NCBI GenBank assembly: GCA_002269645.1
Contig: NIVC01000858.1
Coordinates: forward strand, 201,219 to 265,218
From: Macrostomum lignano
Lineage: Eukaryota
DNA: 64,000 nt
Reading direction: 5' to 3'
The notes beneath the pieces are model-generated. The model made no database searches. It saw only the letters and a program-made list of their open reading frames with translations, and was not told where the DNA came from. Both the position numbers and the translations under genes were made by a program. Of the stretch, positions 39,820-41,673 are shown piece after piece. How positions within the stretch are numbered: position 1 is the first letter of the stretch; each line of letters opens with the position of its first letter.

Positions 39820-40197
39820 CTGAGCTCCACGAGTAGTATCGGATTTGTCAAGCTCATCGAACTGTTGGCGCAGACTTAATGCTTCCATACTCTTTTTAAC
39901 GTTTTATTACTCTGCAATTTCACACGCTGCATGCGCTGTGCACTTTTATTGTTTGGTGTCGGGGCATTTTTGCGGTTCCAAAGTGGCTTCAGGTCAGGTC
40001 AGGTCACGCGGATTTCATGCTAGACTTATGCTAGACCGTTTTGCACATTCCAATATAAATTTTACTGAGAACTGCTGCAGCTTCCAATTGAAATATACTG
40101 AGGTTTTTATTTCTTCATTTATCAACGAACTTACAAATGTGCCTGTTATGCTGAGTCGTTTATTTCCTAGAGAAATTTCTAGGTTTTCAAATAGCAG

Positions 40198-40334
40198 TTT
40201 TCGATACATATCGGCTCTGGTTCGATATGTATTTCTAGATACCCACAGAAAAAACTATTTTTCGATACATATCGGCTCTGGTTCGATATATATGTCTAGA
40301 TACCCATAGAAAAACTATTTTTCAATACATATCG
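40198..40334. repeat. 61-bp tandem duplication (~2.3 copies) immediately before the Twinkle branch point
   Basis: TCGATACATATCGGCTCTGGTTCGATAT at 40201 and 40262. Confidence 0.85.
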
Positions 40335-40370
40335 GTGCTAATCCGAATCGCCATCCGCATTCGCCCGCAG

Positions 40371-41673
40371 TCGGCCGCGGCTGCCAAGTCAGCGGCAGCA
40401 GCAGCAGTGGCGGGCGGCCAGCTGCCCAGCCGCATCATCAGCCTGTCCGGCCAGCTGCGCTCCCGCACCCTGCAGACAATCCTGCGGCACACGGAGGAGC
40501 AGGGCCAGCGCTGGGCACGCTTTACCGAGCTCAACGCCCTGCTGAAGGGCTTCCGCAGTCACGAGCTGACGGTGCTGTGCGGCCGCACTGGCACCGGGAA
40601 GACCACCCTGCTGTCCGAGTACTCGCTGGACCTGTGCGAGCAGGGCGTGCCCACCCTTTGGGGCAGCTTCGAGGTGCCGCTGCACCGCCTCTGCTCCCTC
40701 ATGCTGCACCAGTTCGCCGGCAGGCCGCTGCACCGCGAGCCCGTCGACACCGTCAACGCCGTGATGGACGCCTTCGGCTCGCTGCCGATGCACTTTCTCG
40801 ACTATCACGGACCGCAGTCCACCGCCGCCGTGCTGCGCGACCTGGAGGCCGCCACGGCCGGCCCACTGGGGGTCCGGCACGCCGTCATCGACAACCTGCA
40901 GTTCCTGCTGGGCGGCGAGGCCGACGCCTCTATGGCAGACCGGTTCCTCCGCCAGGACCGGTTCGTGGGCCAGCTGCGCCAGCTGGTCAACCGCACCGGC
41001 CTGCACGTGTCGCTGGTGGCGCACCCGCGCAAGGAGGACCCGAAGAAGCTGCTGGACGTCGGCTCCGTCTACGGCGGCGGCAAGGTGACGCAGGAGGCGG
41101 ACAACGTGCTGCTGCTGCAGGACGAGTCCGGACTGGACGACCGGCCGCACCCGCAGCGCTACCTGCAGGTCAGCTTCACCGCCTACCTCGCTTGCCTCAT
41201 CAGCACTGGCCCCATGAGCTGTCCGGAAATAGTCTCCGATCCCACCTGAGAATCGTCTCCGATCCCACCTGAGAATCGTCTCCGATCCCACCTGAGAATC
41301 GTCTCCGATCCCACCTGAGAATCGTCTCCGATCCCACCTGAGAATCGTCTCCGATCCCACCTGAGAATCGTCTCCGATCCCACCTGAGAATCGTCTCCGA
41401 TCCCACCTGAGAATCGTCTCCGATCCCACCTGAGAATTGCCCCAATTCCACCTGAGAATCACCCTCAATCTCACCTGAGAATCGCTGCAACCCACGCGAC
41501 TCCAACCGCAGGTGGCGAAGAACCGACACGACGGGCAGCTGGGTCGCATGCCGCTGCTGTTCGACCGCCAGTCCAAGTCGTACCGGCGGCTCCGCGCCCA
41601 GCAGCAGCAGGGAGGCTCAGCGCAGCCTGTCAGGGAATCCGGCTCGACCAGTGTTGCCGCATCCGGCTCCTGA
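40371..41673 (+). CDS. TWNK: Twinkle (T7 gp4-like SF4) helicase domain only, exons 40371-41168 and 41512-41673, about 320 aa; 5' end unresolved
   Basis: Motifs are KGFRSHELTVLCGRTGTGKTT (Walker A), WGSFE, VIDNLQF, VAHPRKED, TQEADNVLLLQD and RYLQ|VAKNRHDG. The intron is phase-0 GT-AG. Confidence 0.92.
41232..41480. repeat. 23-bp minisatellite TCTCCGATCCCACCTGAGAATCG (~9-10 copies) in the Twinkle intron
   Basis: Period 23 (41233, 41256). Confidence 0.94.

What the first reader, a model, noticed from the sequence alone, without database searches (positions are those of the whole stretch)
39820..41673. Helicase-only Twinkle with an unresolved N-terminus
All SF4 motifs are intact, but only 551 nt separate the exon from the TRMT9B stop, too little for the several-hundred-residue zinc-binding and primase-like half of canonical Twinkle. 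The first in-frame ATG (40701) is downstream of Walker A, so the start must be spliced on. Model A is leader AUG plus SAAAAK..., with no obvious mitochondrial presequence. Model B is a cis exon 39931-40002 (MRCALLLFGVGAFLRFQSGFRSGQ, weak CAG|GTCACG donor, phase 0) that resembles a presequence but may overlap the TRMT9B 3' UTR. Either way it would be a minimal mtDNA helicase or a repurposed paralog, and alternative 5' ends could give dual localisation.
Basis: partly seen in the sequence, partly recalled or inferred. Interest (0 to 1): 0.72.

Follow-up and report, generated by a model that had tools for sequence, protein, structure and literature searches.

The report
Helicase-only Twinkle gene, flatworm type
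This is an intact two-exon gene for the mitochondrial DNA helicase Twinkle that has lost its whole N-terminal primase-like half; public gene models from more than 20 parasitic flatworms show the same short form, so it is a real lineage trait and not a peculiarity of this genome.

Summary
Exon 1 (40371-41168) and exon 2 (41512-41673) encode 319 residues. They match human Twinkle residues 371-628 (E=5e-65), which is the oligomerisation "tail" plus the complete SF4 helicase core. All catalytic motifs are intact. No primase-like sequence was found anywhere in the 64 kb, by tblastn or by profile HMM. The upstream Trm9-type methyltransferase really ends at 39819, 551 nt before the exon. The first in-frame ATG (40701) lies after Walker A.

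The closest relatives are 260-370-residue proteins from trematodes and cestodes. These start at the same linker position and also have no N-terminal domain upstream. Short forms also occur in acariform mites, Mucoromycota and a rotifer. I found no paper describing this.

The start codon is not encoded next to the exon. The most likely source (about 0.55) is a trans-spliced leader ending in AUG, as in all reported flatworm leaders. The neighbouring methyltransferase shows the same pattern: an in-frame acceptor and no ATG. With no transcript data and the organism unidentified, the N-terminus stays inferred.

Interest is moderate.

The parts
38794..39819 (+). Upstream neighbour: a single-exon Trm9/TRMT9B-type tRNA methyltransferase (stop 39817-39819). 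It begins at the acceptor tttgcag|CAG (38793/38794), which is in frame, and has no ATG before the conserved N-terminal motif EERFVHRVY.
   Evidence: Pfam Methyltransf_11, E=5.7e-16. PDB 5cm2 (Trm9) E=3.5e-14, with the C-terminal 43 residues aligned to the end of Trm9. Sequence.
39820..40370 (+). 551-nt AT-rich spacer (GC 0.40) between the two genes. It is the putative 3' UTR of the methyltransferase plus the outron of Twinkle. It has no coding-like segment.
   Evidence: Composition and codon scores. Only AATATA/AATACA-type poly(A)-like hexamers, at 40052, 40092 and 40324.
39931..40002 (+). It is judged unlikely to be coding.
   Evidence: GC3 is 0.50 and the codon score is -1.06 per codon. 16% of intergenic 24-codon windows score at least as high. 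Other chance ATG...GT mini-ORFs exist in the same spacer.
40198..40335 (.). 61-bp tandem repeat (2.3 copies) immediately upstream of the acceptor.
   Evidence: Tandem Repeats Finder.
40310..40370 (+). 3' splice site region. The acceptor cccgcag ends at 40370, and its AG is the only AG in the last 61 nt.
   Evidence: Read directly from the sequence.
40371..41168 (+). Twinkle exon 1 (266 codons). It holds an Ala/Ser/Lys-rich N-terminal extension (codons 1-19), the linker 'tail' helix (about 40449-40484), Walker A (40581-40604), and motifs H1a, H2, H3 and H4.
   Evidence: phmmer against PDB, Pfam, tblastn of 10 full-length Twinkles, alignments, and GC3 0.91.
41169..41511 (+). Phase-0 GT..AG intron (donor CAG|GTCAGC, acceptor ccgcag|GTG) that holds a 23-bp x 11.2 tandem repeat (41228-41484). 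An intron at this position (YLQ|V.KNR) is also present in Schistosoma and Echinococcus. A spider has one at or within one codon of it.
41512..41673 (+). Twinkle exon 2: the arginine finger KNR (41518-41526), the last strands of the RecA core, a disordered C-terminal tail, and the stop TGA at 41671-41673.
   Evidence: AlphaFold2 pLDDT is below 62 after residue 290.

Best explanation
The locus encodes the organism's orthologue of the mitochondrial replicative DNA helicase Twinkle, in a naturally truncated 'helicase-only' form.

The protein consists of:
- a short N-terminal extension;
- the linker 'tail' helix, which in human Twinkle docks on the neighbouring subunit to build the ring;
- the complete SF4/RecA ATPase-helicase core;
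- a disordered C-terminal tail.

The zinc-binding and primase-like N-terminal half is absent. It was probably lost in an ancestor shared with trematodes and cestodes, whose Twinkle proteins begin at the same point.

Inferred function: the protein assembles into a ring through tail-to-head contacts and unwinds mtDNA 5'-3' ahead of polymerase gamma. Priming is left to the mitochondrial RNA polymerase, as in other animals, where the Twinkle primase domain is already catalytically dead.

Because the exon starts at a splice acceptor and has no in-frame ATG before Walker A, the start codon must be added by splicing. The most likely source is a trans-spliced leader ending in AUG, joined at 40370|40371. 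That gives a 320-residue protein, M-SAAAAKSAAAAAVAGG..., whose acid-free, Ala/Ser/Arg-rich first 40 or so residues could act as the mitochondrial presequence. The methyltransferase 551 nt upstream starts the same way, so the two genes may form a two-gene, trans-spliced unit.

Shown here: the gene structure, domain content, motif integrity, absence of the N-terminal domain in 64 kb, and the shared architecture in flatworms.

Inferred: expression, the source of the AUG, mitochondrial import, ring formation and helicase activity.
For: Identity and integrity:
- Human Twinkle E=4.9e-65 over helicase residues 371-628.
- AlphaFold2 model with mean pLDDT 87.8. The top Foldseek hits are Twinkle 8e2l and 7t8b (TM 0.75 normalised to the query, 0.89 normalised to the helicase-only chain), followed by DnaB and T7 gp4.
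- All SF4 motifs are present, as are all 30 invariant columns of a 53-sequence alignment.
- Codon bias is the same as in neighbouring genes (GC3 0.91).
- The GT..AG intron is canonical and sits at an old metazoan Twinkle intron position.

The truncation is real:
- tblastn with 10 full-length Twinkles, and a profile HMM built from 19 of 21 N-terminal domains, find nothing in either strand of the 64 kb.
- The upstream gene's true C-terminus is 551 nt away.

Lineage trait:
- The best homologues are 260-370-residue proteins from Schistosoma spp., Heterobilharzia, Paragonimus, Fasciola, Opisthorchis, Mesocestoides, Hymenolepis, Echinococcus, Taenia and others.
- They start at the position of window residue 20.
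- The loci of Mesocestoides, S. mattheei, S. japonicum and E. granulosus have no N-terminal-domain signal in 6-10 kb upstream.
- In a neighbour-joining tree the window is sister to this clade.
- The oligomerisation tail (human 369-383, PMC9371709) is retained as window residues 25-39, which form a confident helix.
- Human delta1-314 TWINKLE still forms hexamers and unwinds DNA, with lower efficiency (PMC2241861).

AUG donated by a spliced leader:
- The acceptor is in frame and is preceded by a 61-nt zone without any AG.
- The adjacent methyltransferase has the same arrangement, TTGCAG|CAG.
- All reported flatworm spliced leaders end in AUG, which can act as the initiator (PMC12582326). The Macrostomum lignano leader ends in ...TTGCATG, its trans-splice acceptor motif is YTNCAG, and operon spacing there is below 1 kb (PMC8629364).
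- The first 24 codons of the exon are coding-like, at +1.17 per codon.
- The first 42 residues have no acidic residue.
Against: - No transcript evidence of any kind was available.
- The organism could not be identified. The CCT-theta search gave at most 65% identity, and exact look-ups of window proteins found nothing. A flatworm affinity therefore rests on the Twinkle tree (neighbour-joining, no bootstrap), on about 50% identity and on the shared architecture.
- No spliced-leader RNA gene is in the window.
- The acceptor CCGCAG is only a partial match to the YTNCAG motif described for M. lignano.
- The annotated E. granulosus gene model has a separate 41-residue 5' exon, so a cis-spliced leader exon has a precedent in the clade.
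- A full-length Twinkle paralogue, or a separate N-terminal-domain gene, elsewhere in this genome cannot be excluded from one window.
- The presequence judgement is compositional only.
Confidence: 0.6

Rival explanations
1. The gene is the same helicase-only Twinkle, but the AUG and a presequence come from a cis-spliced 5' exon in the 551-nt spacer or further upstream.
For: In-phase ATG...GT mini-ORFs exist in the spacer. Model B has a hydrophobic/basic composition with no acidic residues. Its donor GTCACG resembles this gene's own weak intron donor GTCAGC. The E. granulosus gene model has a 41-residue 5' exon of this kind.
Against: Model B's codon usage cannot be told apart from intergenic DNA (GC3 0.50, -1.06 per codon, against +0.8 to +1.6 for real exons). 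It starts only 112 nt after the methyltransferase stop, so it would lie in or next to that gene's 3' UTR, with no room for a promoter. Several equally good chance candidates exist. Typical donors in this genome are GTGAG.
Confidence: 0.22
2. [quoted passage not shown] It would be encoded either by exons more than 40 kb upstream, with the methyltransferase, LC8 and other genes nested in a giant intron, or by a separate gene or a full-length paralogue elsewhere. In that case this locus is only part of the story.
For: Only one 64-kb window was available. Metazoan N-terminal domains are poorly conserved and could escape detection.
Against: No hit with tblastn at E<=10, or with a profile HMM using --max, on either strand of the window. 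More than 20 flatworm species have only short proteins, and no full-length flatworm Twinkle appeared among the 120 listed hits (of 196) of the profile search, whereas many full-length arthropod proteins did. Four flatworm loci lack the domain upstream.
Confidence: 0.07
3. The locus is an unexpressed partial duplicate or pseudogene of a full-length Twinkle.
For: There is no ATG before Walker A, and the gene is embedded in a repeat-rich region.
Against: The reading frame is open across both exons and the GT..AG intron is canonical. Every catalytic motif and every invariant column is kept. Strong genome-typical codon bias is maintained. The truncation point is the same as in functional-looking orthologues of a whole clade. 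The adjacent, clearly conserved methyltransferase also lacks an ATG.
Confidence: 0.04
4. Translation starts at a non-AUG codon on an unspliced 5' end. Candidates are GTG 40335, giving (M)LIRIAIRIRPQSAAAAK..., or CTG 40422.
For: The frame is open from 40239. The 12 codons before 40371 have GC3 of 0.75 and would add an Arg/Ile-rich amphipathic stretch.
Against: Non-AUG initiation is rare. A well-formed acceptor with an AG-free zone sits exactly where the GC-rich coding signal begins. The Kozak context of CTG 40422 is poor (C at -3, C at +4).
Confidence: 0.05

Closest known systems
Neodermatan flatworm Twinkle proteins (for example S. japonicum 'Twinkle protein isoform 3', 290 aa; E. granulosus 'Twinkle protein', 327 aa; Mesocestoides corti A0A5K3FE.., 285 aa)
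   Same: They have 47-54% identity over the helicase core and the same architecture (tail, SF4 core and short C-terminal tail, with no primase-like domain). They share sequence signatures: YGGGK in H4, FAG.PL and RF.RQDRFV. The phase-0 intron at YLQ|V is the same in Schistosoma and Echinococcus. The window is sister to this clade in the tree.
   Different: The window protein has 19 extra N-terminal residues (SAAAAKSAAAAAVAGGQL) and no genomically encoded ATG. The parasites encode their ATG at the linker. The window gene is very GC-rich (GC3 0.91) and compact (1.3 kb), whereas the gene spans 36-39 kb in Schistosoma. The parasite N-termini contain acidic residues and do not look like presequences.
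Canonical metazoan Twinkle (human TWNK/PEO1, PDB 7t8b/7t8c; Lates calcarifer 8e2l)
   Same: The helicase domain is about 41-46% identical, with all motifs, the tail-head oligomerisation element and the fold.
   Different: It lacks the roughly 345 N-terminal residues (presequence, N-terminal region and primase-like domain) that in human Twinkle contribute to ssDNA binding and replisome processivity (PMC2241861).
Engineered or natural N-terminally truncated SF4 helicases: human TWINKLE delta1-314 and the T7 gp4D/gp4E helicase fragments (PDB 1e0j)
   Same: They have the same domain content (linker plus helicase). Delta1-314 still forms hexamers and unwinds DNA. gp4D crystallised as a helical filament or ring of helicase domains. 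The model aligns with 1e0j at TM 0.70/0.77.
   Different: Those are laboratory constructs with reduced activity. Here the truncated form is the only one detected for the lineage, and it appears to be conserved by selection.
Short Twinkle homologues in acariform mites (Tetranychus 290 aa, Brevipalpus 289, Halotydeus 345), Mucoromycota (Rhizopus 363, Sporodiniella 353) and the rotifer Brachionus (332)
   Same: They are also linker plus helicase only. Several carry clear presequence-like N-termini (for example MHRLLTRSLVIAKPHIRRNASRL..., MPRITLPCFRKLLTTSPSL...).
   Different: They fall in other branches of the tree, so these are probably independent losses. I verified only the rotifer locus for absence of the N-terminal domain, and only over 2.5 kb upstream.

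Membership tests
Twinkle / T7 gp4-like SF4 replicative helicase | Walker A (H1) GxxGxGKT and the H1a catalytic Glu (WGSFE) | tested here: met
   GRTGTGKT at 40581-40604 and WGSFE. Both fall in invariant columns of the 11- and 53-sequence alignments and align to human Twinkle.
Twinkle / T7 gp4-like SF4 replicative helicase | Walker B/H2 (IDNLQF), H3 (HPRK), the H4 DNA-binding loop, and the arginine finger (KNR) | tested here: met
   All are present and invariant or nearly invariant.
Twinkle / T7 gp4-like SF4 replicative helicase | RecA-type helicase fold that is closest to solved Twinkle structures | tested here: met
   AlphaFold2 pLDDT 87.8. Foldseek top hits are 8e2l and 7t8b/c (E 4e-28 to 2e-23), then DnaB and gp4.
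Twinkle / T7 gp4-like SF4 replicative helicase | Linker/'tail' element that docks on the neighbouring subunit (human residues 369-383) | tested here: met
   Window residues 25-39 align to it and are predicted as a confident helix. The interface is described in PMC9371709.
Twinkle / T7 gp4-like SF4 replicative helicase | N-terminal zinc-binding plus primase-like (RNA-polymerase/Toprim) domain fused to the helicase | tested here: not met
   There is no such sequence in the gene or anywhere in the 64 kb. The locus is therefore an orthologue by descent but a truncated variant of the canonical architecture.
Twinkle / T7 gp4-like SF4 replicative helicase | Mitochondrial presequence and localisation | tested here: inconclusive
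   The Model A N-terminus is acid-free for 42 residues with net charge +5. No predictor (MitoFates/TargetP) or experiment was available, and the true N-terminus is unknown.
Twinkle / T7 gp4-like SF4 replicative helicase | Hexamer/heptamer formation and 5'-3' unwinding | not testable with these tools
   Needs a recombinant protein assay. Human delta1-314 gives a precedent.
Flatworm helicase-only Twinkle subgroup (seen in database annotation; no description found in the literature searched) | The protein starts at the linker, is about 260-370 aa long, and has no N-terminal domain in the locus | tested here: met
Flatworm helicase-only Twinkle subgroup (seen in database annotation; no description found in the literature searched) | Groups phylogenetically with the flatworm sequences | tested here: met
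   It is sister to the neodermatan clade in a BLOSUM62 neighbour-joining tree and has its highest identity (51-54%) to them. There is no bootstrap, and the source organism is not identified.
Genes whose initiator AUG is donated by a flatworm-type spliced leader | An acceptor at the start of the first coding exon that is in frame, with no usable ATG of its own | tested here: met
   cccgcag|TCG at 40370/40371. The first in-frame ATG is codon 111. The pattern is the same in the neighbouring methyltransferase.
Genes whose initiator AUG is donated by a flatworm-type spliced leader | The organism has a spliced-leader RNA ending in AUG, and leader-bearing reads map to this acceptor | not testable with these tools
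   There is no spliced-leader RNA gene in the window, the organism is unknown, and no reads were available. The general rule for flatworms comes from PMC12582326 and PMC8629364.

The most novel reading that the evidence does not exclude
Loss of the entire Twinkle N-terminal half predates the Neodermata and is shared by a non-neodermatan relative, the source of this window. In that case a whole animal lineage replicates mtDNA with a minimal 'tail plus RecA core' helicase. In this species both the initiator Met and the presequence would depend on trans-splicing. The main acceptor at 40370 would give M-SAAAAK.... A second in-frame CAG at 40419-40421 would give M-LPSRII..., which matches the parasite N-terminus. 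Choice between the two acceptors could then produce isoforms with and without the N-terminal extension. Together with apparently independent losses in mites, Mucoromycota and a rotifer, this would show that the N-terminal domain, which hosts human disease mutations and is needed for processivity in vitro, is repeatedly dispensable in vivo.
Probability: 0.4. Interest if true: 0.55.

Novelty: new member of a known kind. Interest (0 to 1): 0.42.

Why it matters
[quoted passage not shown] It still promotes ssDNA binding, helicase activity and replisome processivity, and it carries disease mutations.

A lineage in which the only detectable Twinkle lacks that domain completely is a natural experiment. 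It shows which parts are essential (the oligomerisation tail and the RecA core). It also raises the question of what compensates for the missing domain: a different loader, mtSSB, polymerase gamma contacts, or small genomes that tolerate low processivity.

For parasitic flatworms, a structurally divergent essential mitochondrial helicase is also of practical interest as a selective target.

The window gene adds a divergent, non-parasite-like member to the group. It also gives a clean example of a gene that probably depends on the spliced leader for its start codon. Gene predictors routinely miss this, which may be why no annotated protein for it exists.

The finding is not revolutionary. The short proteins are already in public databases, although I found no paper that discusses them.

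Tried and rejected
**Identifying the organism failed.**
- The CCT-theta exon search returned only hits of 65% identity or less, from fish, coral and insects.
- Exact look-ups of the LC8 protein and the methyltransferase found nothing.
- Rfam gave only a snoRNA.
- I considered Macrostomum lignano, which has a repeat-rich genome, a spliced leader ending in ATG, and GTRAG donors. I could not support it, because no near-identical protein appeared in either search.

I tried to look up M plus the spliced Twinkle product in the assembly index.

**No spliced-leader RNA gene was found.** I searched the window for the M. lignano leader (up to 8 mismatches) and for a TTGCATG|GTAAG-like motif. Neither search found anything.

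**The YLQ|V intron is not a flatworm-specific character.** A spider Twinkle gene also has an intron at or within one codon of this position. It supports metazoan Twinkle orthology only.

**There is no synteny with the flatworm loci.** Their upstream neighbours are different genes.

**Two apparent genes were artefacts.**
- The antisense ORF 40389-41576 (395 aa) is a by-product of GC-rich coding sequence.
- The 633-aa ORF at 32220-34121 is a translated satellite repeat, and its Pfam hits are spurious.

**Literature searches were negative.** Searches for a description of natural helicase-only Twinkle found none.
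Full report
**What is there**

The window is eukaryotic. Its exons are very GC-rich (GC3 0.78-0.96), its spacers are AT-rich, and it is unusually rich in tandem repeats.

At the reported place, a reading frame opens at the splice acceptor cccgcag|TCG (40370/40371). It runs to a donor CAG|GTCAGC (41168/41169). It resumes after a 343-nt intron at ccgcag|GTG (41511/41512) and ends at TGA 41671-41673. 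The intron holds a 23-bp x 11 tandem repeat. The spliced product is 319 residues without a start codon.

**Identity**

- Pfam finds AAA_25 and DnaB_C.
- phmmer against PDB sequences gives human Twinkle (7t8b) at E=4.9e-65, with query 27-290 aligned to human 371-628. It gives Lates calcarifer Twinkle (8e2l) at 7e-61.
- An AlphaFold2 model built from a 53-sequence alignment has mean pLDDT 87.8. Its best structural matches are those two Twinkle structures, followed by DnaB and T7 gp4, including the gp4D helicase fragment.
- Walker A (GRTGTGKT, 40581-40604), H1a (WGSFE), H2 (IDNLQF), H3 (HPRK), H4 (GGGKVTQEADN) and the arginine finger (KNR, 41518-41526) are all present. The protein keeps all 30 columns that are invariant among the 53 homologues.
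- Residues 25-39 correspond to the human 'tail' (369-383), which binds the 'head' of the next subunit in the ring (PMC9371709). They are modelled as a confident helix.

The protein is therefore the oligomerisation tail, the full helicase core and a disordered C-terminal tail.

**The truncation is real**

- tblastn with ten full-length Twinkles from insects, spiders, stramenopiles and unidentified assembly contigs hits only 40431-41198 and 41494-41670.
- A profile HMM built from the N-terminal domains of full-length Twinkles (19 of 21 candidates were long enough to use), run with all filters off against the six-frame translation, finds nothing in the window.
- The upstream ORF (38794-39819) is a Trm9/TRMT9B-type methyltransferase. 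Its last 43 residues align with the C-terminus of Trm9 (5cm2), so its stop at 39817-39819 is genuine and the spacer is 551 nt.
- The spacer has GC 0.40 and no coding-like stretch.
- The first in-frame ATG is codon 111 (40701), after Walker A (codons 71-78).

**It is a lineage trait, not a local oddity**

The best database matches to the window protein (47-52% identity) are proteins of 260-370 residues. They come from Heterobilharzia, at least eight Schistosoma species, Trichobilharzia, Paragonimus, Fasciola, Opisthorchis, Calicophoron, Mesocestoides, Hymenolepis/Rodentolepis, Anoplocephala, Echinococcus, Taenia, Sparganum and Schistocephalus. Some are already named 'Twinkle protein'.

Most of those whose sequences I read start MSRVLRLDGDLL, MRIVRLNGDLL or MKIVKFDGELL. 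This aligns with window residues 20-31 (PSRIISLSGQL), about five residues before the tail. The Echinococcus (327 aa) and Sparganum (370 aa) models carry this motif internally, behind a non-primase N-terminal extension.

I fetched the loci of Mesocestoides corti, S. mattheei, S. japonicum and E. granulosus. None has N-terminal-domain similarity in the 6-10 kb upstream or in the introns. No full-length flatworm Twinkle appeared among the 120 listed hits (of 196) of the profile search, although many full-length arthropod proteins did.

In a neighbour-joining tree of the helicase core, the window protein is sister to the neodermatan clade. It shares their signatures (YGGGK, FAG.PL, RF.RQDRFV).

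The phase-0 intron at YLQ|V is shared with Schistosoma and Echinococcus, and a spider has one at or within one codon of the same position. It therefore supports metazoan orthology, not flatworm affinity specifically.

Short linker-plus-helicase homologues with convincing presequence-like N-termini also exist in acariform mites, Mucoromycota and a rotifer. They sit on other branches of the tree, so these are probably independent losses.

I found no paper that describes any of this.

**Function (inferred)**

Metazoan Twinkle primase domains are already catalytically inactive (stated in PMC12230644). Their loss therefore removes an accessory ssDNA-binding and processivity module, not the priming activity.

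Human delta1-314 TWINKLE still forms hexamers, hydrolyses ATP and unwinds DNA. Its ssDNA binding is reduced, and it supports only about 1-kb products with polymerase gamma (PMC2241861).

The window protein keeps everything that delta1-314 keeps. It most likely acts as the ring-shaped 5'-3' mtDNA helicase. Flatworm replisomes have presumably adapted to the missing domain.

**The N-terminus**

The frame is open from 40239 but has no ATG. The acceptor's AG is the only AG in the last 61 nt, and the GC-rich coding signal starts there. The first 24 codons score +1.17 per codon.

The adjacent methyltransferase begins in the same way. Its acceptor is ttcatttgcag|CAG CAG CAG CGG. It is in frame, has no ATG before the conserved EERFVHRVY motif, and leaves an N-terminal length that matches Trm9.

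All reported flatworm spliced leaders end in AUG, which can serve as the initiator (PMC12582326, citing Cheng et al. 2006). The Macrostomum lignano leader is ...TTGCATG, its trans-acceptor motif is YTNCAG, and same-strand genes closer than 1 kb are treated as operons (PMC8629364).

This makes 'leader AUG plus SAAAAK...' the most economical model (about 0.55). It also suggests a possible two-gene methyltransferase-Twinkle unit.

The resulting N-terminus has 5 Arg/Lys, 10 Ala, 8 Ser/Thr and no acidic residue until position 43.

It starts 112 nt after the methyltransferase stop, and it is one of several chance ATG...GT candidates. The E. granulosus gene model does have a separate 41-residue 5' exon, so I keep a cis-exon model at about 0.2.

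**Limits**

- The organism was not identified.
- No transcript data exist here.
- One window cannot exclude a second Twinkle gene elsewhere in the genome.
- The tree is distance-based and has no support values.

**Verdict**

The gene is a new, divergent member of a helicase-only Twinkle group that is already visible in flatworm annotations but, as far as I could find, has not been discussed in print. Interest is moderate (0.42).

Noticed in passing
window 38787-38860: The Trm9-type methyltransferase gene also starts at an in-frame acceptor (tttgcag|CAGCAGCAGCGG) and has no ATG before its conserved N-terminal motif. This is a second candidate for a leader-donated AUG. With Twinkle 551 nt downstream on the same strand (138 nt of which is tandem repeat), the two genes may form an operon-like pair.
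   Followed up: partly
window 40419-40421: An in-frame CAG inside exon 1 could serve as an alternative acceptor. A leader AUG joined at 40422 would give M-LPSRIISLSGQL..., which matches the N-terminus encoded in parasitic flatworms (M-SRVLRLDGDLL). This is a purely speculative route to isoforms with and without the Ala-rich extension.
   Followed up: no
window 1-7346; 15788-19622; 32363-34149; 41996-42599; 43329-43775; 44717-46000+: Satellite load is extraordinary. It includes a 31-bp unit x 237 copies at 100% identity, a 23-bp unit x 166, 20- and 33-bp units that fill an intron of the CCT-theta gene, and 24-, 41- and 46-bp arrays downstream of Twinkle. Most introns and spacers here carry their own private tandem repeat.
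   Followed up: partly
window 32220-34121 (-): A 633-aa ATG ORF is only the translation of the 20/33-bp satellite inside CCT-theta intron 2 (MEQRRGLSSIQ... repeats). It draws spurious Pfam hits (adenovirus fibre head, DUF6545) in which no individual stretch passes.
   Followed up: yes
window 10431-10504 (-): A C/D-box snoRNA of the snR61/Z1/Z11 family (49.5 bits, gathering score 45) lies at the edge of a 17-kb AT-rich (27-38% GC) region that has no obvious genes.
   Followed up: no
L004 (Echinococcus granulosus APAU02000104.1) 6440-6480: In E. granulosus, the exon carrying the conserved MKIIRFDGDLL start is preceded by an acceptor only 3 nt upstream (ttggatag|GTA ATG). A leader AUG would be in frame there too (M-V-M-K...). 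The annotated 41-residue 5' exon may therefore be one of two ways to start the protein.
   Followed up: partly
P0005, P0002 and other neodermatan Twinkle proteins: The annotated N-termini of the schistosome and Mesocestoides proteins contain 5 acidic residues in the first 40 and do not look like presequences. How these proteins enter mitochondria, or whether their true starts are also spliced on, is unexplained.
   Followed up: no
P0018, P0214, P0225, P0272, P0276, P0269, P0262 (proteins); L005: Helicase-only Twinkle homologues occur in acariform mites, Mucoromycota fungi and the rotifer Brachionus. Several have clear presequences followed by a short spacer and the linker. These look like repeated independent losses of the primase-like half, which the literature I could search does not describe.
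   Followed up: partly
window 36522-37160 (-), 37724-37993 (-), 30619-34310 (+), 27142-27858 (+), 50146-54654 (-): Other genes in the window are an NPAS4-like bHLH exon, a single-exon dynein light chain LC8, CCT-theta (at least 3 exons, GTGAG donors), a WD40-repeat exon and a 1502-aa ORF with a MYND zinc finger. LC8 and CCT-theta carry their own ATG.
   Followed up: partly
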